From assembly GCF_036365525.1 (NCBI RefSeq), contig NC_090404.1, positions 7,750,001 to 7,814,000 of the forward strand: a stretch of 64,000 nt of DNA, given 5' to 3'. Position 1 is the first letter of the stretch. The number at the start of each line of letters is the position of its first letter. Below, in pieces: positions 6,661-59,407 of the stretch. The position numbers were made by a program, and so were the translations under genes. Below the pieces are notes generated by a model. That model had not been told where the DNA came from. It saw only the letters and a program-made list of their open reading frames with translations, and did no database searches. The stretch comes from Heterodontus francisci. Taxonomy: Eukaryota.

Positions 6661-7339
6661 GCCAGCATTGAGGGAGGAGGCAATGGGCGTGAGAAAACCT
6701 GCTTGATAATTACAGTAAATAGGCAGGAAGGTAACAGCTCGAGATGGAGTGTGAAATTGGGAATTTTGTAAGTATGGGAATTTTAAGGGTTAATTTTAAG
6801 GGTTAGTCTCTTTCTAAAAGCTAGTCAAGTTTGCATATGGCTTTTGACAACAATTCACTGTTGAAGTAGTTTAATTAAGTCTTGGGGATAAACAAGCTCC
6901 CTGCTGGAGAGGTAGCTACTGTTCTTTAATGAGGTAGCTAGTTGGAACTGGTTTCTCCAGCCAGCAGTACCTGACTCAGCTCTGTAGCGTTTCACCCAGA
7001 ATAAATACAGGTGGTTTGACTAAGCACAGAAAGTAAGCAGACATGCAGGTAGCAGCTCGAGACAGAGTGTGAGCTTGGAAATTCACTAAGGGTGGAAATT
7101 CGACCAGTGTGGAATTCGGGAGTAGTGTCATGGAGGACGTGTTGCTCTGACCCTTCGTAAAGACTGTGTGGTCTTAGCAGTGGTGATCAGCAGTGAGAAG
7201 AGAAAGCTGAAGGCTGGAAACATTAATTAGGTGACCAGTCAGGCGAGTGGCTGCAGAGTTTTAAGTTTTTTTTTCTCTAAATGGGGAGAGTAGTTTAATT
7301 AGTTTGTGAGTTATAAATGTTGCATTAAATTTATATCTA

Positions 7340-8075
7340 GAGCGGTGGATTAGAAAAGAGCAGGGTCAGTGAGGGAGCAGAGCCAAAGCAGTGGATTAGA
7401 AAAGAGCGGGGCTGGTGAGAGAGCAGAGTCAGAGTGGTGGATTAGAAAAGAGTAGGGCCTATGAGGGAGCAGAGTCAGAGCGGTGGATTAGAAAAGAGCG
7501 AGGTCAGTGAGGGAGCAGAGCCAAAGCAGTGGATTAGAAAAGAGCGGGGCCGGTGAGGGAGCAGAGTCAGAACGGATTAGAAAAGAGTGGGGTCGATGAG
7601 GGAGCAGACTCAGAGCGGTGGATTAGAAAAGAGCGAGGTCAGTGAGGGAGCAGAGCCAAAGCAGTGGATTAGAAAAGAGCGGGGCCGGTGAGGGAGCAGA
7701 GTCAGAGCGGTGGATTAGAAAAGATTGGGGTCAATGAGAGAGCAGAGTCAGAGCAGATTAGAAAAGAGCGGGGCCTGTGAGAGAGCAGAGTCAGAGTGGA
7801 TTAGAAAAGAGCGGGGCCGGTGAGAGCCGAGTCAGAGCAGTGGAGTAGAAAAGAGCGGAGCCAGTGCGGGAGCAGAGCCAGAGCGGTGGATTAGAAATGA
7901 GCGGGGCCAGTGAGGGAGCAGAGCTCGGGCAGTGGATTCGAGAAGAGCGGGGCCAGTTAGGGAGCCGATTCAGAGCGGTGGATTAGAAAAGAGTGACGCT
8001 GGTGATGGAGTCGGAGCCAGAGCAGTGGATTAGAAAATAGCAGGGCCGGTGATGGAGCAGCGCCAGAGGGGTGGA
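7340..8075. repeat. 46-bp GA-rich minisatellite, about 16 copies
   Basis: GATTAGAAAAGAG recurs at 7348, 7394, 7440, 7486 and onward. Confidence 0.95.
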
Positions 8076-8214
8076 TAGCTTCTGGTTTCAGAGCGGACCA
8101 GCTGTATTCTCAAGAAAATCAAGCGTGCTGTGACTGTGGAGCAGGTAAGTGATTGGTGAGTATATTTTTCTCTTTTTCTTACTTTTTAAAACCTCCTTTC
8201 TCTCTTGAAACGCA

Positions 8215-32387: not shown

Positions 32388-32909
32388 ATGGAGGTGAAAC
32401 TCTGTCTGACTCTGATTATTGTCCTGATTATAGGTCAGTGATATTGGGACCTTTCTATAATATTCCCAGTTCTCAAACAATTTCACATCTCTATCTCCGA
32501 GTGATTATTCTTTTCCTGTTACTCCGTCTAACCTTCCGTGTTTCTGCTGTTTATTTTCAGAGATGAATAATGGAGACCCAGTGTCCCAGTCAGAACAAGG
32601 GGTCAGATCAGAAGAGGGTGCAGATTCAGCAATAAACTGCAGTTACTCCGTATCGGATTCAGCTGCAAGCTATTATCTGTTCTGGTATCGCCAGTATCCA
32701 CACCAAGCCCCTCAGTATATGCTCAGAGCCGATAGTTTTGGGTATAATGAGACTGTTCCAGGTTTTGAACACTTCAGCGCGAATCTCAACCAAAAACAAG
32801 GCACTTTTCACTTGTCCATGAAAGACTTGAAGATCACAGACAGCGCCGTGTATTACTGTGCCCAGAGACCCACAGTGAATGAGACTGCCTTGGGCCTCAT
32901 ACAAAAATT
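32388..32909 (+). CDS. TCR V alpha/delta gene segment, apparently functional (leader 32388-32433, V exon 32561-32870, 23-RSS 32871-32909)
   Basis: Leader MEVKLCLTLIIVLII, GT/AG phase-1 intron, DPVSQS..INCSYS..YYLFWYRQYP..DSAVYYCA; CACAGTG-23-ACAAAAATT. Confidence 0.93.
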
Positions 32910-33374
32910 AGGTACAGCTCGGCATCGAGGATGGTGCTGGTGGTGGGTGAGGGGGCGGGGCGTGTTGGGGGAGCGGGCGGCACCTCAGGAAAATACCAAG
33001 AATTGACTCCGCGACAGTTTGCACAAAAAATGAGAGAATAAACTTCCCGATCCGATCGGGTTTTTCCAGCTGAAGCCATTGCTGTCAGTGTTGCGATAAC
33101 TGACATTTCTCAACCATTTTAAGCCAGAGTCAAATTCAAATATTTTCACCCCCAGTGTCGGCTCAAACCTACAGCCTTCTAGGATAACTAGTAGAAACCA
33201 TTTCTGCAAATAAAATATTGACTGTGTTGAGTTCAGTCTCACCAGTGCTAAGTGGTGTCCACTATATTATATCCCTCATAATCTTCAGACTATGAACGGT
33301 AATGGGGTCATTGGCTGGCAGTGATGACCGGGATTGAGATTGATTTCGATAATTTTCTACTTCTCATGTCACTA

Positions 33375-34309: not shown

Positions 34310-34743
34310 ATGTGTTCCCCATATTCCTTACTGGTAATAATGGTTTAGCTGCCCCATGAGTCTGTGATTAAATGATCAGTCTGTGTTCTAGGGGTTATGA
34401 TTACTCCCAGACTTTTGACACTTTCTGTATTTTGTTACAGCAACGAGTGGTAAAGATTCAGTGTCTCAGGATCCGTGTGAATTAACGGTTCAAGAAGGAC
34501 TGACTATAATACTAAACTGCAGTTACTCCACACCCAGTGACTTTCCCAACCTCGACCAGTATTCTGGGGAAGTTCCGAGATATTTACTGAGGAGATACAG
34601 CAATGGACAGGGAGATAAGTCTCCAGCTTTCCCAGACCTGCTGTCCTAGACTAAAAAAAGATAATGATTCATTTAAATGCCACCGGGGCTCTTGTCTCTG
34701 ACTCTGCCGTGCATCACTGCCCAGTCTGTCCGTACAAAAAGAA
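34310..34743 (+). pseudogene. TCR V alpha/delta pseudogene
   Basis: Leader with stop; exon from 34441 DSVSQDP..ILNCSYS; Trp region deleted, in-frame stop, DSAVHHC; heptamer missing but nonamer-like ACAAAAAGA remains. Confidence 0.8.
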
Positions 34744-35242: not shown

Positions 35243-35793
35243 ATGTTGGTTGTTGCTTTGTATTCATTCCTCACAGCTGCAGCTCTCTTAACTGGTAAAG
35301 TTTACAAGTTTTTTCTTTCCCTTTGAAGGTGTCACTGACATAGAAAATCTACCTGTTAGCTATTTGCAACACATTCTGTCACATTTATATTCGTTGTAAC
35401 AAAGTGATAATAAAAGCTTAAAGTTCTGTATTTCTAAATTTCTGCAGGTGTTACTGGTGCAGACTCGGTCTCACAGGGGCCGGCTACAGCGATACAGTTT
35501 GAAGGAGACTTGGTGACCATTAATTACAACTATTCGACTACTGTTGATTCATATTCCTTACAACTGTACCGTCAGGACCGGGAGAAAGCCCCCACATTCC
35601 TCATCTACATCCCTAAATATGGAGATGTTTTCAGAGCAGAGGGCGTGGGCAATCGATTTTCCGCATCTCTCGACACTTCGAAAAGTGAGGGGAATTTCAC
35701 CATCCGCGACCTGCGGCTGTCTGACAGCGCGATGTATTACTGCGGGCTGAGACACACAGTGACAGGAACCAGAGGGAGCCTCGTACAAAAACA
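35243..35793 (+). CDS. TCR V alpha/delta ORF lacking Cys23 and Trp41 (leader 35243-35294, V exon 35448-35754, 23-RSS 35755-35793)
   Basis: Leader MLVVALYSFLTAAALLT; DSVSQGP..INYNYS..LQLYRQ..DSAMYYCG; CACAGTG-23-ACAAAAACA. Confidence 0.85.
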
Positions 35794-36674
35794 CTGCCTC
35801 AGTGTGACAAGATGAACGCAGCAGCGGGCCCTGTGAGGTGAAAGGGGAGAGTCAGTACTTATCACAGGAGAGCGTTAGTGTAAAAGCAGCCAAATCAACA
35901 GCTGTTCAACTAACAATACAGCACAGAAACAATGTTTATTATTAATAAAATAATCTTGAAGTTAATTTCATAATACGATGTCTGAATGGACTGCTCTTCC
36001 AATCTCGGTTTATTTCCTGGGCACCTTAAATTTCAACCTTACTGAAACAATTATAAAACTACTTCTCATTCTGCGCCAGAGTCTCATAAAAGACCTGGCG
36101 CTTCAGTTGGCTGGAAATGAACTGAAAGGAGGGTTTACATTCAGTCATTACTTAATAGACCATAGAGGAATAACCTTCAGAACAATGAAGTCTCCTCTGA
36201 ACTGAGAGACTGAGAGACTCAGGTCCTAAACTGTGGCGGAATCACGGGATGCTGACTGTACCAGTTGAGAATATTTACTGAGAAGCGATATAATAAGGAG
36301 CGGTGCGACCCGGTTCCACATGATACTCCGTGAGTCTGTCACTCCGCCGTGCGGGAGCTCTGTCCGAGCAGAAATACAGATCCCCGCCCCACTGCACTAC
36401 TGATCCAACCAATACCAAACAGGGAACAGCAGCAGCAATCTCCCCAGTAACACAGGGCAGGCAAGGCGGGTCAGAGTGAGAACAATAAACGGAAGCTGTG
36501 GGCGGGGCTACCGCAGAAACAAATTGAGTGAATTGAAAACTCTGTGTAAGGGCAGAGGGTGCGGGACGCCGCTCAGCTGCACTGGGAGCTGATGGAGCGG
36601 AAATGGCGATGTTTCCATCTCTAGATGCCTCTGGATAAACTATTGCTGCTCACTGATCAAGTGACTGCAACAAG

Positions 36675-37070: not shown

Positions 37071-37390
37071 GAGTGGGAGCGAAAAGAGGAGATTGTGCGG
37101 GAAGGAGAAACAGTGACGCTGAATTGTAGTTTTACAGCAAAAAATACTGTCGCTGATCTTTTCTGGTGCCAGCAGGTTCCCCATCGGGCTCGGGAAAACG
37201 TATTTCTTATCACCAAATAAGGCACGTTCTCAGCCGACTTCGTGAAGCACCGTTTTCCAGCAGAGCTGAGCACAGCGGAGAGCACGGTTCAGCTGAGAGT
37301 TTATGGGGCGAAGCTGTCAGACAGCGTCGTGTATGACTGTGGTCTGAAACCCACAGCTGTATAGTTCTGTGACCAACAGAAAATAAAACT
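37071..37390 (+). pseudogene. TCR V alpha/delta pseudogene
   Basis: REGETVTLNCSF..LFWCQQVP..ITK*..ADFVKHRF..LSDSVVYDCG; degenerate RSS CACAGCT at 37352. Confidence 0.8.
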
Positions 37391-43766: not shown

Positions 43767-44890
43767 ATGCGGCTCCCCGCTCTCGCCGTTTTCTGGGTGA
43801 CATTCATTCTCGGTAAGAAATTTAACATTTTTAAAAGGGATTAATTTCCAGAGGAATAAATTTTCAGAACAGCGCTTTCATGTCAAACTTGTATCCAACC
43901 TGTTTAGACCACAATTGGGTTATTGTGAGCAGTTCTGGTCTCCAGATTGCAACAAGGATATCGGGACACAGGAGAAAGTACAAGAACGATTTGCAAGACT
44001 GATACCAGAATTGAGAGATAATTTAGCAGACACCATTGTCAGGCCGAGGCTCTTTTCTCTAATAAAGAGAAATCTGAAGGGTAACCTGAGAGATATCTTT
44101 AAAATGTGATGGAGTTCGTTAGGACAGAGGGAGTGAAAATGTTTCCACTTGTGGAGAATTCCAAGTCTATGTGTCATAAATATAAGAGTCACCAAAAACT
44201 CCAGTAGGGAATTCAGGAGAAACTTCTTTACCCAGAGAGTGGTGAGAATGTGGAACTCGCTACCACAAGGAGGGGTAGAGATGAATAGCATTGATACATT
44301 TAAGCGGAAGCTGGATAACCAGAGGATGGAGAAAGGGCTGGAAGGATATGGTGACAGAGTGAGATAAAGAGGGCTGGAGGATGCTCCTGCGGAGTGTGAA
44401 CCCTGGTATGGACCAGTTGGGCCGAATGACCTTTTCTGTTTTCTAAATTCTATTAACATTTATGAAACACTGACTGCGAATTTCCACCGTAGGTTCGGTT
44501 CAGGTGAAGTTTTAATCGATGATTTCTGCTTTCTTTAACCGTGTGTTCCAGACCTGAGCGATGGAGATTCTGTTACTCGGCGGGACTCCTCGCTCACACA
44601 GAGGGAGAAGTTGTCACTTTAACCTGCACCTATCCCGGCGATGGTTATTACTTATTCTGGTACCGCCAATACCCAGGCAGACAGACCGAGTTTGCAGTCC
44701 GGAGGTACAAGAGCGGCGGTGATGAATTGAAGGCGGATTTCGCTCAGAACCGGTTTTCTGATACAGTCCAGCAGTCAGACAAGTTGTACCAATTGACCAT
44801 CTCGGAGCTGCGGCTGTCTGACACCGCGGTCTGTTACTGTGCACTGAGTCTCACAGTGATGGGAACGTGCTACAGCCTCATACAATAACT
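43767..44890 (+). pseudogene. TCR V alpha/delta pseudogene with FR1 frameshift (leader 43767-43812, V exon 44552-44851, 23-RSS 44852-44890)
   Basis: Leader MRLPALAVFWVTFIL; spliced frame DSVTRRDSSLTQREKLSL* is out of frame with TEGEVVTLTC..YYLFWYRQYP..DTAVCYCA; CACAGTG-23-ACAATAACT. Confidence 0.85.
43880..44460 (+). mobile_element. CR1 3' fragment within the leader intron
   Basis: YCEQFWSP..KVQERFARLIP; FRRNFFTQRVVRMWNSLP. Confidence 0.85.
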
Positions 44891-52420: not shown

Positions 52421-52764
52421 CTTCACCTATCATTCAGGGATAGATTTGAAAATGTCTGAGACCAATGTGCACAGTTGGTTGCAGGTTGTGTGATAAACGG
52501 ACAAAATCCAATATTATATAATATAAATGCAAAATGCTGCAGATGCCGGAAATCTGAAATAAAAACAAGAAATGCTGGAAACACTCAGCAGGTCTGGCAG
52601 CATCTGTGGAGAGAGAAGCAGAGTTAATGTTTCAGATCAGTGACCCTTCATCATATTATGTTCTTTTTATTTAAGCGCAGTGTGTGAGTTGTGCTCGAGT
52701 TGTCGAATATATATTTTGTTCATGATCCACCCGCTTAAAGTGTCTGTAATCCCCACTATGTTCA

Positions 52765-52929
52765 GGTTTTTGTACATCTCTCTCCGTGCTCTGTATCACT
52801 GTGTGTCTGTAATATCTACCATGCTCAGGTTTTTGTACAGCTCTCTCCCTGTTCTGTATCACTGTGTATCTGTAATCTCCACCACGTTGAGGTTTTTGTA
52901 CAGCTCTCTCCGTGTTCTGTATCACTGTG
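52765..52929 (-). other. Three tandem consensus 23-RSSs (63-bp period)
   Basis: Heptamers at 52923-29, 52860-66, 52797-803; nonamers ACAAAAACC at 52891-99, 52828-36, 52765-73; all spacers 23 bp. Confidence 0.97.
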
Positions 52930-53235
52930 CTGTGCGCCGACTCAGTGCACAATAATACACAGCGGAGTCGCTCAGTTGGAGGTTGTAGATTTCTAACCGG
53001 CTGATTTTCTCGGCAGTATCGATAGAAGCAGAAATGCGTCCCCCGGCTGCGTTTTCCTTGTTTTGATCTCCTGAAGTGTGTCTCTGAAGCAGGTATTTCG
53101 GAGCCTGCCCTGGGGACTGACGGTACCAGTGTACTGTGTATTGACAGAGCCCTGAATATTCGCAACTTACAGTAACGATGTCACCGACAGCAGAGGTTTG
53201 TAGAGGCGGACTCCGGGACACCAGGGAACTGGGAT
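52930..53235 (-). CDS. NAR-TCR supporting V delta segment (leaderless, CDR1 Cys)
   Basis: Phase-1 acceptor then (D)PSSLVSRSPP..VSCEYSGLCQYTVHWYRQSP..DSAVYYCAL; no leader found upstream; extra CDR1 Cys is characteristic of supporting V delta. Confidence 0.92.
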
Positions 53236-56200
53236 CTGCAGTATGAAAATGAATATTATTGTGTCTTTAGTTGCTGTTTAGGCTGAAACACCTATCAATC
53301 ACAGGCATAACTCAGACTTCCGCGGGAGTGCTGCTTTGTTTATTTCTTTCAGGGGATATGGGCGTGGCTGGCCAGGATAACATTTATTGCCCATCCCTAA
53401 TTGCCCTTGGGAAGGCGGTTCTTCATTTGAAGCCCGGTTGAAGTTTTTTCACTTTAATTGGCAAAAGAACCAGCTCGGAGCTGTGGTGAGATTTCTGATC
53501 TGGGATGCACTGCCTGAAAAAGCGGTGGAAGCAGATTCAATAAAAGCTTTCAACAGGAAATTGGATAGATACTGGAGAAGGAAGAATTGGTTGGGCTGTG
53601 AAGAAAGAGCAGGGAGAGTGGGACTAATTGAACAGCTCGATCACAGACAAGATGGGCTGAATGATTTCATTCTGTGTTGTATCATTCTATAATTACTATT
53701 ACATTTCTGGTTCTATTTTTCTTGGTGAAAGACAAACAGTGGAAACGTTTTAATAGTCTATTCTCCTCACGGAGACAATCACCTTCCAAAAAGAAATGTT
53801 TGACCGAGCGTAGCGCCGTTGTGTTGTGTTTAACTGAGCAGTGAAAATGCAACATAATGCAGTGAGATACATGAGAACGATTGAGCCAAGTGACGCTTAA
53901 CATCTTTGCTTTGAAGATCAGAGTTTAACTACAGGTTCACGCTTCAAAGGAGTTCCTGTCTGCCTCAAGCTCTTATTATATATTTTATACCCATTACGGA
54001 GCCCGTTTTGTTCAACTTCACTTTAATCTCGGATTTATATGGGTACTTTCATTTTATTTCTAAGTCTGGATCACTCATTTTGTACTAGTTTCGCTTTTTG
54101 CCATCATGGGAACTTGTCCCAAAGTCTCTCAGTTGTCGGTTGGTTTCAGTTTGTGCAGTTTCCGCAGTGGTTTAACTGTTACTAACTGGGAACAGGTTCT
54201 TCCGGCTCTCTGATAATTTCAGTTCTTGCAGCCACTGGCTGAGTATCTACCCTGTTCTCAAAGCGATGAAAATTGAATATGATCATTAATCTGCAGAACC
54301 GGAATTGGCCATTCGGCCCTACTGGTCTATGCGGGATTTTATACTCCACAGGAGTCACCTCCCGCTTTAATAACCTCTTCCCGTCCTGACCTCTTTGTCC
54401 CTTTATTCCTTTCTCCCTCCTGTATTTTCAAGCCTCCCCTAAAGTACATCAATGGCATATTCTCCAACTCCCCCTCTCTGCCAGGGTGTTCCAAGTTCTG
54501 ACTTGTCTCTATGTAAATAAATTCTTCCTAATGTCTTTATTTTTCGATCAGTGACTATCTTATATTTATGGCTCTTTGTTCTGAACTCACTGATAATTGA
54601 AAGCATTATCTCCACCTATATCCTTTCCAACAATTTTTGCATTTTAATGATGTCGACCAGTTCTCCTCGCTGTCTTCTCTTTTCCGGATATAAGAGCCTG
54701 GGGCTGTTCAATCTTTCCAGATAGGTGTGGATTGCTGTTGATGTCTTTTCTCAGGTATATTAGAAATCCAAAAGTGAGAGAAAGTCCAGAATCTAATCGC
54801 AGCCCGTCACTCCAGTGAATCTCACTTCCGGGTATTGGGTTGTGTTTGAACAGCCCTGAGACCGGAATCTCCAGACACCCGCCTGGCCAATGAAGTCTGG
54901 TATGTCTCACCCTTTCGATTAATTATTTCTAGCTGGTATTAAATGGACTTTCTGCCAGTCTGCAATCGTTCCCTAGGCTATTCCCTGTGCCCTTTTTATA
55001 AGAACACGAATTCCTCGCTCTCACTTATTCACTGCTCACTGTTACTTCAACTGACAGTAACCAAGGATGCAGATCCATTTCTGCAAACCTATCTCTCATA
55101 CATGAAGAATACCTATGACCTAGAATGTCACAGAATGTATAGCACAGAACTAGTCCATTCGGCCCAAATGGTCCATGCCGAACATCGATACCCGCTGCTC
55201 CATGTCACCTTGACATGATATCATTCTATTTTTTTCTCCCTCAAATGTTACGGGAGCTCCCCCTTGGATGCACTGATTCTTTTCTCCTCAACTGCTCCAC
55301 ATTCCAACCACTGCCTGAGGGATCACATTTCCACTGAATGGTTTTGTGGTGTTATTAAGAACATAATGACCATGAGAGATGAGCAATAGTCAGCCACACA
55401 GCCGATGTGGAAAGCCTGGAACTAAGAGTCAAAGTCCGAGGACAAAGAGTGACTTATTTATGACTTTGGTCAGTAGACATGTCATCACTCAGACAGTTGT
55501 GAAACTTTGGGCCTGTCTAACCCAGACGGCTTTAAATGTTCAGTCAATTACTACACCAGGTTGGGACACAGCAACGCTCTGGAGAATTGCTGCAAGACCT
55601 CTGCACTCATATACTCCAAGGGACTTGCAATAAAGGCTAACATAATAATCCCCTTCCTAATTGCTTGCTGTACCTGCATTTCAACGTTCTGTGACTGTGA
55701 TTCATGCTCATGTTACACCAAATCCCTCTGAATGACAATATTTTCAACTCTCGCACCTTTTACAAATATTCTTCATATCAAACTGAACAGGATTATTGAA
55801 TTTTTGAGGAGGTAACAGAGAGAGTAAACAATGGCAATGCAGTTGATGTAATTTATCTGGATTTTCAAAAGGTCTTCGATAAGGTATCCCATAATAGACT
55901 AAAGAATAAGGTCAGAGAATGCGAAGTCAAGGAACTGATCCACAGGCTTGACTTATCATTTCAAATTTACTAAATTAACATTGGGATTAGATTGTATCCC
56001 TTATTTAACTGTCGGTATTGGATAGGCCGCAGCAGGTATCGAAGGGGTCACTTTCGGGTTAGGTTCACTCTCCCGGTACCTCATTCACACTGTCCGGCCT
56101 GGAATGGAATATTCTTCCGAAGAGAGAGAGAGCTCTGACACCCTGCCCGCGCTCAAAGGGACAGGCAGAGCTTCCTCAGTGACAGTGAACAGCGGGAGCG

Positions 56201-56561
56201 GAGGCCGGAGTCTCGACTAGCTGCGCTCATTTAAACCAACTGTGGATCAGAGTGAGAAGGAGTTTGGGATGTTTTGGGGATTCTGCGAGGTCCACGTTCA
56301 ACCGCTGATGTTCCAGATGGGGTCAACACCCCGCAGACTGCCTTCTCTGTGGGGATCTCACCTCATCTCTCCAGACTCAAACCTGGACCGTATTCCCCGT
56401 TCACAATTTAGTCCGAATCACAAATTGCATTGAAAACGTTCCATTAGGGAACTGCTCTGTTTTATTTTTAAGGGAGTGAGGTGATATTGATCGCGATTAC
56501 AAACTGAGGGTGAACATTTACTCTGACAGTCTGTAACACGGCGGGTTTTGCAGTCACTTAC

Positions 56562-56658
56562 CGGCTGTGATAGTCACCACCGTCCCGGATCCATCCACGT
56601 ATCTAGTCTCGTAATTGCCACCCCAGTAAACACAGTGTTTCAAGTCAGCATCAAATCC
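56562..56658 (-). CDS. Germline-joined NAR-TCR D-J (unit B) with 5' 12-RSS
   Basis: 12-RSS at 56631-56658; D TTTACTGGGGTGGC (56617-30) + AA + J (56562-614) encoding YWGGNYETRYVDGSGTVVTITA; GTAAGT donor. Confidence 0.93.
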
Positions 56659-56982
56659 CCCGTTACTTGGTGAGATGTGGAGATATTAGTTAAACGCGAG
56701 GACTGCGGCTTCCGGTTCCAGCTGTTAGATCAGGATATCATCTGGTGTCAGGGGCTATTAACTGGGATCAGTCATTTCGAAACAGCATTCACTGACACGG
56801 TTCCAGGGAAAGAAATCGTCATCCGCGCACACTGGGCATTTATAAAATTCAAGATGTTAACGGCAATAGTCCAATCTCATTATAAACTAGATTGTCGAGC
56901 AGACGGTTGGAGGTGGAACTGTGGGGTTTAATGACAGATTCACTCCACTTTTTCATTTGTTTCTGTGATAATCGACAGCGAG

Positions 56983-57308
56983 AGTTTTTGTACCGCGGGA
57001 ATCCGAGGCCCATCACTGTGTGTTGTTTCTGTACTCAGCTTTACAGTAATAGGTGGCGCTGTCTTCAACTCTCACATCTCCAATTTTCAGGGAAAATGTC
57101 TTTTCTGCCTTATTCACCGACACAACAAATCGCCCTCCGTCGGAGATCCGCTCCCGCTCCGTCCCCGTCTGGGTTTGTCTGAAGAAATGTCCATTTTTGA
57201 AATAATGGCATGAATTACCAGAGTCAAAAACACAGGTGATGGTGAGAGACTGACACTCCTTCCTGGTCACCGCTGCCGGGGTCTGTGTCACTGGCTCACT
57301 GGAAGAGC
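56983..57308 (-). CDS. NAR-TCR (IgNAR-like) V segment, unit B, leaderless (exon 57021-57308; RSS 56983-57020)
   Basis: VTQTPAAVTRKECQSLTITCVFDSGNSCHY..ERISDGGRFVVSVNKAEKTFSLKI..EDSATYYCK; short VNAR-like domain without CDR2; CACAGTG-22-ACAAAAACT. Confidence 0.92.
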
Positions 57309-58093
57309 CTGGAAATTAAACAGAGTGAGTTGAATTTGCTATCAGAGCCGAACCACACAACGGGTTAAAACCCCAGATTTAGCCTTCGTCTTCATGTCCG
57401 ACTACCGTTATTAAACCATCTGTCCCTTCCTGACTCAAACTGCTGGATTTTATCCTGGTCGGCACTCAGCTCTACAACCTTGACTTATCTTTTCAAATTT
57501 ACTAAATTAACATTGGGATTATATTGTATCCCCTATTTAACTGTCGGAATCAGTTAGCCTGCTGCAGGTATCAAAGGGACCGGTATAGTGTTGGGTTAAT
57601 TCTCCCGGTACCTCATTCACACTGCCCGGCCCGGAATGGAATATTCTGCCTGAGAGAGAGAAAGAGAGCTCTGTCACCCTCTCCCGTGCTCAAAAGTACA
57701 GAGCTTCCTGAGTCACAGTGACCAACGGGAGCGGAGGCCAGAGTCTCGACAATCTGCGCTCATTTAAACCAACTGTGGATCAGAGTGAGAAAGAGTTTGG
57801 GATGTTTTGGGGATTTCCCGAGGTCCACGTTAAAACGTTGATGTTCCAGATGGGGTCAACACCCCGCCGTCCGCCTTCTCTGTGGGGATCTCACCTCATC
57901 TCTCCACTCTCAAACCTGGACCTCCTCCCCGTTCACAATTTAGTCCGAATCACACACTGTAATGAATACGTTCCATTAGGGAACCGGTATGTTTTATTTT
58001 TAAGGGATTGAGGTGATATTGATCGCGATTATAAACTGACGGTGAACATTCACTCTGATAGTCTGTAACACGGCGGGTTTTGCAGTCACTTAC

Positions 58094-58185
58094 CGACTGT
58101 GATAGTCACCACCGTCCCGGATCCATCCTTGTATCTAGTCTTGTAACACAGTGATACCGTTCTCAGTCAGCCCGGTACAAGAACT
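58094..58185 (-). CDS. NAR-TCR J segment, unit A (coding 58094-58146; 23-RSS 58147-58185)
   Basis: YKTRYKDGSGTVVTITV then GTAAGT donor; CACAGTG-23-ACAAGAACT. Confidence 0.93.
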
Positions 58186-58508
58186 ACCGACACCTGAAAC
58201 TGCCGGTCACACATCATCAGACATTCGACGCTGCACAGTTATTCCAGGGAAATCAGATCAATAAATAATATTCCATGTTTCACATTCCCTGTCGGTTCAA
58301 ACTGTTCTTTGTGAGATTCTGAGCTCTTCGTAAAATGGCCAAGGAACACGGGTCGGAGATGGACGCTTCACAGAACGGGAGAAAAATGTCAGACAAAGAA
58401 ATTAGAAAGGCGGAAATTACAATAACCTTAAACCATATTGCAGTGAAAATAACATCAAACCTACAATTCAGGATTCGCTCCCAGTAGTTTCTATTTTAAT
58501 TGTACAGT

Positions 58509-58578
58509 GGTATTTGTTCAGGTCTGTCCCGTCGTGGCCACCCCAGTAAACACAGTGTTTCAAGTCAGCAGCAAATCC
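58509..58578 (-). CDS. NAR-TCR D segment, unit A (coding 58537-58550), 12/12 RSS
   Basis: V-side CACAGTG-12-AGCAAATCC; J-side CACGACG-12-ACAAATACC; core TTTACTGGGGTGGC. Confidence 0.88.
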
Positions 58579-58896
58579 CCCGGTACCTGGTGAGATCTGG
58601 AGATATTAATTAAAAGGCGGGGTTGCTGTTCCCGGATCCAACTGCGAGATCAGGATCCCATCTGGTGTCAGGGGCTTGTAACTGGGATTATTTATTCCCA
58701 ATCGCCATTCACTGACACCAATCCTGGGAAAGATGTCACCATCCGCACACACTCGGCATTTATAAAACTCAAGATGTTAACGGCAATAATCCAATCTATA
58801 AACTAGACTGTGGCGCAGACGGTGCGAGGCGGAACTGTGGGGTTTAAGGGCAGATTAAAGCCGCTTTTTGATTTGTTTCTTTGTTAATCTGCAGTG

Positions 58897-59407
58897 AGTT
58901 TTTGTACCGCGGGAAGCCGAGGCCCATCACTGTGTGTCTCTGTACTCAGCTTGACAGTAATAGGTGGCCGTGTCTTCAACTCTCACATTTCGAATTTTCA
59001 GGGAAAATGTCTTTTCTGCCTTATTCACAGACACAGCAAACCGCCCTCCGCTGGAGATCCGCTCCCGCTCTGCCCCGGTCTGGGTTTGTCTGAAGAAATG
59101 TCCATTTTTGAAATAATGCCTTGAAGCACCAGAGAAAACACAGTTGATGGTGAGAGACTGACACTCCATCCTGGTCACCGCTGCCGGGGTCTGTGTCACT
59201 GACTGACTGAAAGAGCCTGGAAATTAAACAGACAGAGTTTAATGGGCCATCAGAGCCGAAACACACAACAAGGCTAAAACCTCAGACAGTGTCTGTAATT
59301 CGGATGGACTCGGGCAGCTTTATATTAAATCCACACAATGTCGGTTTGTTTGATCGGTACTCACGGGGTAAAAAGACACACAGGGTGAAAACAAGGAGGA
59401 TTCCCAT
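58897..59407 (-). CDS. NAR-TCR (IgNAR-like) V segment, unit A, with leader (leader 59365-59407; exon 58935-59216; RSS 58897-58934)
   Basis: Leader MGILLVFTLCVFLP, GTGAGT donor; SVTQTPAAVTRMECQSLTINC..EDTATYYCQ; CACAGTG-22-ACAAAAACT; TATA-like CATATAAA about 25 nt upstream of the ATG. Confidence 0.94.

What the first reader, a model, noticed from the sequence alone, without database searches (positions are those of the whole stretch)
56562..56658. Germline-joined D-J with a P-nucleotide footprint of RAG activity in a TCR locus
Seen: unit A has D and J 390 bp apart with intervening RSSs. In unit B the same 14-nt D abuts a 53-nt J, both untrimmed, separated only by AA, and both inner RSSs are precisely gone. 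AA is the reverse complement of the J's first bases (TT), as expected from hairpin opening. The fused frame is open (YWGGNYETRYVDGSG). Established: germline-joined segments occur in shark Ig clusters and in the supporting V of marsupial TCR mu. Inference: a germ-cell RAG event that removes one recombination step and fixes much of the middle domain's CDR3.
Basis: partly seen in the sequence, partly recalled or inferred. Interest (0 to 1): 0.85.

Follow-up and report, generated by a model that had tools for sequence, protein, structure and literature searches.

The report
Germline-joined D-J in shark NAR-TCR
In a shark T-cell-receptor gene cassette, two of the three pieces that immune cells normally join are already joined in the assembled genome, with the footprint of the recombination enzyme; this habit is known from shark antibody genes and is seen here in a T-cell-receptor cassette.

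Summary
On the minus strand lie two tandem NAR-TcR-type cassettes. Unit A is V / 12-D-12 / 23-J, with D and J 390 bp apart. Unit B has the same 14-nt D, then AA, then a full-length 53-nt J. Homology between the units breaks exactly at the D end and resumes at the J start. The join obeys the 12/23 rule, and AA+TT is palindromic, though two bases are weak evidence.

The best reading is an inherited RAG-type coding joint, which leaves V-B (23-RSS) one step from a 12-RSS-DJ. The remaining RSSs and D are far better conserved than the neutral flanks. An RNA-like run of the source sample shows J-B spliced to the leaderless supporting V-delta.

Reads also show a sister B-type cassette that is fully V-D-J-joined with a different D-J junction. 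It appears at about single-copy DNA depth and in a Heterodontus francisci RefSeq model, so germline joining recurred in this family. First readers of this scan noted such VDJ and VD joints elsewhere in this genome, but not this joint.

Not shown: the joint in non-lymphoid DNA or in a second individual, and its use as a "middle domain". I found no published germline-joined NAR-TcR segment.

The parts
56631..56658 (-). Retained 5' 12-RSS of D-B (nonamer GGATTTGAT, 12-nt spacer, heptamer CACTGTG)
   Evidence: Read directly. 27/28 identical to unit A's 5' D-RSS, against 81% identity in the adjacent intergenic DNA.
56617..56630 (-). D-B, 14 nt, untrimmed, identical to D-A
   Evidence: Exact pattern match at two places in the window; alignment A1.
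56615..56616 (-). AA between D and J; palindromic to the J's first TT (candidate P nucleotides)
   Evidence: Absent from unit A. Chance of such a palindrome is 1/16 to 1/8.
56562..56614 (-). J-B, 53 nt, untrimmed, ending one base into a codon (phase 1)
   Evidence: 49/53 identical to J-A. An RNA-like run shows a splice joint from 56562 to 53235.
56556..56561 (-). Splice donor gtaagt after J-B
   Evidence: The joint in run X5 has GT..AG ends on the minus strand, depth 113.6, 2 contigs.
57021..57308 (-). V-B exon: NAR-type V behind a splice acceptor, no leader of its own
   Evidence: Six-frame reading and tblastn; Pfam V-set. Homology to unit A starts only 70 nt into the leader intron.
56983..57020 (-). 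23-RSS of V-B (CACAGTG, 22-nt spacer, ACAAAAACT)
   Evidence: 37/38 identical to V-A's RSS.
58509..58578 (-). Unit A: 12-RSS, D-A, 12-RSS (the unjoined counterpart)
   Evidence: 3' RSS is CACGACG, 12-nt spacer, ACAAATACC.
58094..58185 (-). Unit A: 23-RSS (AGTTCTTGT, 23-nt spacer, CACTGTG) and J-A, followed by gtaagt
58897..59407 (-). Unit A: leader exon (59407-59365), intron, V-A exon (59216-58935), 23-RSS (58934-58897)
52930..53235 (-). Leaderless supporting TCR-delta-type V exon (phase 1 acceptor, Cys in CDR1), splice target of J-B
   Evidence: splice joint 53235/56562 in run X5.

Best explanation
Unit B of a tandem pair of NAR-TcR V-D-J mini-cassettes carries an inherited D-to-J coding joint made by the V(D)J recombinase in the germ line. 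The cassettes lie in a shark TCR alpha/delta-type V region, very probably of the horn shark Heterodontus francisci. RAG cut at the 3' 12-RSS of D and the 23-RSS of J. The roughly 390-bp signal-ended piece was lost. The hairpinned J end was opened two bases off centre, giving AA, and both coding ends were joined without trimming. What remains is a DJ segment with an intact 5' 12-RSS and an intact splice donor. A NAR V with a 23-RSS (V-B, possibly also V-A) now needs a single recombination to make a complete V exon. In that exon the C-terminal two thirds of CDR3 (YWGGNYETRYVD...) is germline-fixed, and only the V-D junction varies. The exon is then spliced to the leaderless supporting V-delta. 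Shown: the anatomy, the legality of the join, the conservation of the remaining signals, and J-B to supporting-V splicing in RNA. Inferred: the germ-line origin, RAG as the agent, and present-day use in V-to-DJ recombination.
For: Breakpoints sit exactly at both coding/heptamer borders, with odds of about 5e-6 for a random deletion. Unit A shows D 3' 12-RSS and J 23-RSS, so the join obeys the 12/23 rule. AA+TT is palindromic. The units are old duplicates: V-D intergenic identity is 81.4% and J-downstream identity is 88%. Yet the V-B 23-RSS is 37/38, the D 5' 12-RSS is 27/28 and D is 14/14. P(at most 2 changes in 80 nt) is 1e-5 to 3e-3, which points to constraint on unit B's recombination signals. 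Run X5 has exon-restricted depth and a GT..AG joint from J-B (56562) to the supporting V (53235) at depth 113.6. A V-B-like/J-B-like V-D-J junction with different processing (V trimmed, 7 extra nt, D core CTGGGGTGG, AT, J trimmed by 7) appears in a DNA run of the same sample at depth 13.3, against about 10 for single-copy flanks. It also appears in RNA at depth 47. Its translation YYCKAEYDGTGVDTRYVDGSGTVVTITA occurs twice in a genome-derived RefSeq model of H. francisci. Germline joining therefore hit this cassette family at least twice, independently. Germline RAG joining with P-region footprints is established for shark Ig genes (PMC2193156, PMC4279169).
Against: No DNA from a second individual or from a defined non-lymphoid tissue covers the joint. 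Run X8 had zero depth there, and runs X1 and X2 are the source sample and look like one data set filed twice. The listed DNA contigs stop at 56621, at a k-mer branch shared with unit A, so no listed piece is shown bridging 56615. Two bases are thin evidence for a P region. They could be N bases, or ancestral bases of D-B or J-B. Transcripts carrying the exact GGC-AA-TTACGAG junction were not demonstrated. Depth over V-B and J-B in RNA is inflated by paralogues at least 95% alike. V-B has no leader, and an untrimmed V-B to DJ-B join would be out of frame, which is normal for V(D)J but means use is unproven.
Confidence: 0.75

Rival explanations
1. The joint is inherited and RAG-made, but unit B is a dead end: a leaderless duplicate that is no longer used, so the joint has no functional consequence.
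For: V-B lacks a leader, because the duplication starts inside the leader intron. No transcript with the exact DJ-B junction and no V-B to DJ-B or J-A to V-B joint was listed. No in-frame ATG lies upstream of DJ-B.
Against: The V-B RSS, the D 5' RSS, D, the J splice donor and the V-B reading frame are all intact after about 12-19% neutral divergence. J-B to supporting-V splicing is seen in RNA. Phase-1 boundaries let either leader-A or J-A splice onto V-B.
Confidence: 0.15
2. The joint is a somatic D-J rearrangement of a lymphocyte that the assembly captured; the germ line is unjoined.
For: The tissue of the source sample is unknown to me. The joint has exactly the look of a lymphocyte coding joint. 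No independent individual could be checked.
Against: A consensus assembly needs most reads to agree, and any one DJ joint in a polyclonal tissue is rare. The joint has no N bases and no trimming, whereas the other junction in this family has both. The source DNA run showed no alternative letters, indels or joints at 56562-56658 (a missing row is not proof of absence). The same animal carries a fully joined VDJ relative at about single-copy DNA depth, which is also in the RefSeq annotation, so inherited joins exist in this family.
Confidence: 0.06
3. An ordinary deletion (replication slippage or end joining unrelated to RAG) removed the D-J spacer.
For: Deletions of a few hundred bases are common between old tandem duplicates.
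Against: Both ends fall to the base on the coding/heptamer borders. There is no microhomology at the ends (GGC / TTA). The two added bases are palindromic to the J end.
Confidence: 0.02
4. Unit B keeps an ancestral unsplit DJ, and unit A was split later by insertion of an RSS-ended element.
For: RAG can transpose signal-ended DNA (discussed in PMC2193156).
Against: No target-site duplication flanks the 390-bp piece in unit A. The extra AA is in B, not in A. A sister B-type cassette carries a different D-J junction, which needs an unjoined B-type ancestor. The NAR-TcR V domain is described as arising from its own V(D)J rearrangement (PMC1845163, PMC5931798).
Confidence: 0.02

Closest known systems
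Germline-joined Ig clusters of cartilaginous fish (VJ light-chain genes of nurse shark; VD-J and VDJ heavy-chain clusters of horn shark), ascribed to RAG activity in germ cells (Lee et al. 2000, PMC2193156; review PMC4279169)
   Same: A closely related split counterpart sits alongside. The RSSs are completely excised. The junction has a possible P region that implies a hairpin intermediate. The flanking introns and signals are kept, and CDR3 diversity is reduced.
   Different: Here the joined segments belong to a NAR-TcR cassette inside a TCR V region, not to an Ig cluster. Only D-J is joined (V-DJ). The joints listed in PMC4279169 are VD-J, VDJ and VJ. In the library I could search I found no report of a joined NAR-TcR segment.
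NAR-TcR, the doubly rearranging TCR delta chain of sharks and chimaeras (Criscitiello et al. 2006, as described in PMC1845163 and PMC5931798)
   Same: A NAR-type V with a Cys in the a-b loop and no Trp in the WYRQ motif. It has its own D and J, a J splice donor, and a leaderless supporting V-delta with a CDR1 Cys.
   Different: The published description has each V domain made by a full V(D)J rearrangement. Here one cassette is pre-joined at D-J, lacks a leader, and stands in tandem behind another cassette.
Marsupial TCR mu V-mu-j (germline-joined supporting V)
   Same: A three-domain TCR chain analogous to NAR-TcR, in which one V domain has lost somatic recombination steps (PMC7615758).
   Different: V-mu-j is completely joined and is thought to come from retrotransposition (PMC7615758). 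Here only D-J is joined, flanking introns and RSSs are preserved, and it is the outer NAR-type V, not the supporting V, that is affected.
Partially germline-joined VH of the opossum (Wang and Miller 2012, cited in PMC7615758; not read here)
   Same: A partial germline join that still recombines somatically.
   Different: By its title it concerns a VH gene in a mammal, whereas this is a D-J join in a shark TCR cassette. The details are from memory of the title only.

Membership tests
NAR-TcR cassette | V-set domain of NAR type: Cys in the a-b loop and no canonical Trp in the WYRQ motif (criteria in PMC1845163) | tested here: met
   V-A and V-B read ...TR(M/K)ECQSLTI(N/T)C... and ...GHFFRQTQ.... 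Pfam V-set E = 1e-9 and 2e-9.
NAR-TcR cassette | The NAR V has its own leader peptide | tested here: not met
   Met for unit A (leader exon 59407-59365). Not met for unit B: homology starts 70 nt upstream of the V-B exon and no leader-like exon is seen.
NAR-TcR cassette | Own D and J with RSSs, and a J that ends in a splice donor in phase with the next exon | tested here: met
   Unit A is V-23 / 12-D-12 / 23-J. J-A and J-B end in phase 1 before gtaagt.
NAR-TcR cassette | Leaderless supporting TCR-delta V with a Cys in CDR1 downstream, spliced to the NAR J | tested here: met
   The exon at 53235-52930 starts at an acceptor in phase 1 and has CDR1 ...SGLCQY.... The RNA joint 56562 to 53235 has GT..AG ends.
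NAR-TcR cassette | Expressed with TCR delta D, J and C | not testable with these tools
Germline-joined antigen-receptor segments made by RAG (criteria of Lee et al. 2000, PMC2193156) | A closely related split counterpart exists, and the joint holds nothing derived from the RSSs | tested here: met
   Units A and B are 86-89% identical, and homology breaks exactly at the D end and J start.
Germline-joined antigen-receptor segments made by RAG (criteria of Lee et al. 2000, PMC2193156) | The joined signals form a legal 12/23 pair | tested here: met
   In unit A the D 3' RSS has a 12-nt spacer and the J RSS a 23-nt spacer.
Germline-joined antigen-receptor segments made by RAG (criteria of Lee et al. 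2000, PMC2193156) | Junction processing typical of coding joints (P region, trimming or N) | tested here: inconclusive
   AA is palindromic to the J's TT, but the chance odds are 1/16 to 1/8. There is no trimming.
Germline-joined antigen-receptor segments made by RAG (criteria of Lee et al. 2000, PMC2193156) | Present in non-lymphoid or germ-line DNA and inherited | tested here: inconclusive
   Only DNA contigs of the source sample cover the locus, and none is listed as bridging 56615. The run from another individual has no depth there.
Marsupial V-mu-j type (retrotransposed, fully joined V) | Complete VDJ join, ascribed to retrotransposition (PMC7615758) | tested here: not met
   The V-B RSS, the D 5' RSS, the V-DJ spacer and the J intron are all present.

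The most novel reading that the evidence does not exclude
The horn-shark NAR-TcR family has been repeatedly remodelled by germ-line RAG activity. The result is a graded series of cassettes: unjoined, D-J-joined (this one), V-D-joined and fully V-D-J-joined. Several of these are leaderless and stand in tandem behind a rearranging cassette. The locus could then encode semi-invariant NAR domains and possibly TCR delta chains with more than two V domains. This would be the first germline-joined segments described in a cartilaginous-fish TCR locus.
Probability: 0.35. Interest if true: 0.75.

Novelty: new member of a known kind. Interest (0 to 1): 0.55.

Why it matters
Germline joining by RAG is the textbook oddity of shark antibody genes. 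It is the main evidence that the recombinase still edits the germ line of some vertebrates. Finding it in a T-cell-receptor cassette extends that process from Ig clusters to a TCR locus. A sister cassette joined independently and further strengthens this. It also gives a natural series of intermediates for dating such events. A NAR domain with a largely pre-set CDR3 points to a semi-invariant gamma/delta-type receptor, which parallels the pre-joined V of marsupial TCR mu. Practically, it warns annotators that NAR-TcR cassettes cannot be assumed to be uniformly V-D-J. Many RefSeq models of them read through RSS heptamers.

Tried and rejected
1. Independent individuals. The one reads call included a targeted-capture run of another animal (X8), which had no depth over 55,950-59,140.

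I could therefore not fetch the DNA of paralogues or orthologues to date the join.

3. A scan of metagenome contigs for the conserved J core found nothing.

4. RefSeq-type models of L-NARV-J-supportingV from many elasmobranchs at first looked like widespread germline VDJ joins. I rejected that as general evidence. Many of their 'CDR3s' contain translated RSS heptamers (SLW and (V)TV for CACTGTG, THSD for CACAGTG), so they are cryptic-splice gene models. Only P0008 is corroborated by a DNA contig.

5. Triple-V use of unit B. No J-A to V-B splice joint was listed in the RNA-like run. This is no proof of absence.

6. A D-mu-like protein from DJ-B is excluded, because no in-frame ATG lies upstream.

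7. Literature. Six searches found no germline-joined NAR-TcR report. The original NAR-TcR paper and the 2021 review were not held, so prior description cannot be excluded.

8. The search of earlier findings by sequence was blank, which means nothing here.

Full report
**What is there**

Everything relevant lies on the minus strand. At 59407-59365 is a leader exon (MGILLVFTLCVFLP, phase 1). A 148-nt intron follows, then a V exon at 59216-58935 (V-A). V-A and a second copy at 57308-57021 (V-B) are V-set domains (Pfam). Both carry the two marks of the NAR-TcR V listed in PMC1845163:
- a cysteine in the a-b loop (…ECQSLTI…);
- FFRQ in place of WYRQ.

At 53235-52930 lies a leaderless V of TCR alpha/delta type. 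It has a phase-1 acceptor and a cysteine in CDR1 (…SGLCQY…), which makes it the 'supporting' V-delta. The region is therefore a NAR-TcR cassette of a cartilaginous fish. Other TCR-type V segments lie on the plus strand at 32.5, 35.4 and 44.6 kb.

**The observation**

Unit A is V-A with a 23-RSS (CACAGTG, 22-nt spacer, ACAAAAACT). It is followed by a 14-nt D (58550-58537) flanked by 12-RSSs on both sides. The J (58146-58094) sits behind a 23-RSS and ends in gtaagt. D and J are exactly 390 bp apart.

Unit B is V-B with the same 23-RSS (37/38 identical) and the same 5' 12-RSS (27/28). The identical D lies at 56630-56617, followed by AA (56616-56615) and then J-B (56614-56562) and gtaagt. J-B is 49/53 identical to J-A and starts at the same base.

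blastn gives two HSPs: A 59286-58537 = B 57377-56617, and A 58146-57479 = B 56614-55947. They end and restart to the base at the D end and the J start. The fused segment is open in the J frame and reads YWGGNYETRYVDGSGTVVTITA.

**Is it more than chance?**

A random deletion with both ends exactly on the coding/heptamer borders has odds of about 5e-6. The two lost signals form a legal 12/23 pair. Nothing RSS-derived remains, and there is no microhomology. AA followed by TT is the palindrome expected from off-centre opening of the J hairpin. For two bases, however, the chance is 1/16 (or 1/8 for either end), so I give it little weight alone. These are the criteria Lee et al. used to ascribe germline-joined shark light-chain genes to RAG acting through hairpin intermediates (PMC2193156).

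**Age and constraint**

The two units are old tandem duplicates. Segment identities between them are:

| Segment | Identity |
|---|---|
| V-D intergenic DNA | 81.4% |
| DNA downstream of J | 88% |
| V exons | 91.8% |
| V-B 23-RSS | 37/38 |
| D 5' 12-RSS | 27/28 |
| D | 14/14 |

The two RSSs and D show 2 changes in 80 nt. At the neutral rates seen beside them, P is 1e-5 to 3e-3. The recombination signals that unit B still needs for a V-to-DJ join have therefore been kept, either by selection or by conversion from unit A. This argues against a decaying relic.

**Reads**

The one runs search found four DNA runs and small RNA-like runs of a single sample, plus capture and RAD runs of other animals. 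I laid X1 and X2 (DNA), X5 (RNA-like) and X8 (another animal) on 53150-59140.

- **X8** gave nothing over the cassette.
- **X1 and X2** have identical contig depths (about 10) and are probably one data set. They cover the region without alternative letters, indels or joints at 56562-56658.
  - The listed contig (56621-56847) stops inside D, exactly where 31-mers become shared with unit A.
  - No listed piece is shown bridging the joint, so the DNA evidence is 'consistent', not proof.
- **X5** has exon-restricted depth: supporting V, J-B, V-B and V-A are high, introns about zero.
  - It has a GT..AG joint from 56562 to 53235 at depth 113.6, so J-B (or a near-identical paralogue) is spliced to the supporting V.
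  - No J-A to V-B joint was listed.

**A second, independent germline join**

X5 (depth 47) and the DNA run X2 (depth 13.3, about single-copy level) both hold the same contig. It joins V-B-like sequence (to 57031) through 18 letters to J-B-like sequence (from 56607). Read on the minus strand, the 18 letters are GACGGCA + CTGGGGTGG (D core) + AT.

Its translation, YYCKAEYDGTGVDTRYVDGSGTVVTITA, occurs twice in P0008. P0008 is a genome-derived RefSeq model of Heterodontus francisci on a 59.5-Mb record. Its V is 94.6% identical to V-B, and 100% over the last 33 residues. Three things follow:
1. The sample is very probably H. francisci.
2. A sister B-type cassette is fully V-D-J-joined in DNA.
3. 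Its D-J junction (GGTGG-AT-ACTAGA) cannot be derived from the window's (GGTGGC-AA-TTACGAG). The two joins are therefore independent, and the window's join is younger than the split of the two B-type cassettes (inference).

First-reader notes of this scan place 'leaderless germline-joined NAR-TCR VDJ exons' 54-60 kb beyond the window's end and a V-D joint 3.4 Mb away. I could not read that DNA, so these are leads. The first agrees with P0008.

**A caution on the annotation evidence**

The search with a basking-shark model (P0003) returned 75 models of leader-NAR V-J-supporting V from many elasmobranchs. Many of their 'CDR3s' contain translated heptamers: SLW or (V)TV for CACTGTG, and THSD for CACAGTG. 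They are gene models that splice cryptically from the V end into the J-RSS. They are not evidence of germline joins. I use only P0008, which a DNA contig corroborates.

**How it most likely works**

By the 12/23 rule V cannot join J directly, because both carry 23-RSSs. After the germline D-J join, a 23-RSS V needs only one recombination to the 12-RSS of DJ-B. This applies to V-B and, with deletion of D-A, J-A and V-B, also to V-A. CDR3 diversity is then confined to the V-D junction. An untrimmed join is out of frame, so normal junctional processing is required.

V-B has no leader. It must receive one by splicing, either from leader-A or from J-A, both of which are phase-compatible. Which route is used is unknown. 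The 'middle domain' wording of the finding rests on the J-A to V-B route, for which I found no read support.

**Comparison with what is known**

Partly or fully pre-joined Ig clusters (VD-J, VDJ, VJ), ascribed to RAG in germ cells, are a known peculiarity of cartilaginous fish (PMC4279169, PMC2193156). From my own memory, the horn shark is the classic case for heavy-chain clusters.

NAR-TcR is described as two V domains, each made by its own V(D)J rearrangement (PMC1845163, PMC5931798). I found no report of a joined NAR-TcR segment. The original 2006 paper and a 2021 review were not available.

The marsupial V-mu-j is fully joined and probably retrotransposed (PMC7615758). This joint keeps its flanks and signals.

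**Verdict**

This is a real, precisely RAG-shaped D-J joint. It is very probably inherited and plausibly still in use. It is a new member, located in a TCR-linked NAR cassette, of the known class of germline-joined shark antigen-receptor segments. Confidence is about 0.75 for the inherited-RAG-joint reading. Interest is moderate (0.55): the mechanism is known, the locus is new, and the family-wide pattern deserves a proper survey.

Noticed in passing
reads laid on window 56607/57031; protein P0008: A fully V-D-J-joined B-type NAR exon exists elsewhere in the same animal. It was seen in DNA at depth 13.3 and in RNA at depth 47. It is present twice in tandem in a Heterodontus francisci RefSeq model, which chains J, a partial VDJ, a VDJ and the supporting V.
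   Followed up: partly
window 57021-57308 and 58094-58146 (minus strand): V-B has an extra Cys in CDR1 (…SGNSCHY…), like the supporting V, as well as the a-b loop Cys. J-A ends and V-B starts in phase 1, so a J-A to V-B splice would be in frame. No such joint was listed in the RNA-like run. RefSeq models in Heterodontus (P0008) and Carcharodon (P0006) do chain a J onto a further NAR V.
   Followed up: partly
window 52740-52929: Three tandem copies (63-nt period, 88% matches) of a complete 23-RSS stand behind the supporting V-delta. An ENA protein (P0073) reads through a similar array.
   Followed up: partly
window 8220-29899: A 38-bp satellite of about 560 copies (91% matches) with strong GC skew lies next to the TCR V region. 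A 46-bp repeat array lies at 7339-8076.
   Followed up: no
proteins P0003-P0070: Many RefSeq 'uncharacterized protein' models of NAR-TcR cassettes in sharks, rays and skates contain translated RSS heptamers (SLW, (V)TV, THSD). They join V to J by cryptic splices, which is an annotation artefact that mimics germline-joined genes.
   Followed up: partly
window 58099-58676 (minus strand): Low-level RNA-like cover (depth 4-7) runs across unit A's D-J spacer, with a 99-nt skip (58365 to 58465). Similar cover lies at 56647-56863, upstream of DJ-B. These are possibly germline (sterile) transcripts or DNA carry-over.
   Followed up: no
window 32461-33003, 35438-35812, 44577-44849 (plus strand); 34458-34726, 37080-37346: TCR alpha/delta-type V segments lie in the opposite orientation to the NAR cassette. 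Two further copies have in-frame stops and are probably pseudogenes.
   Followed up: no
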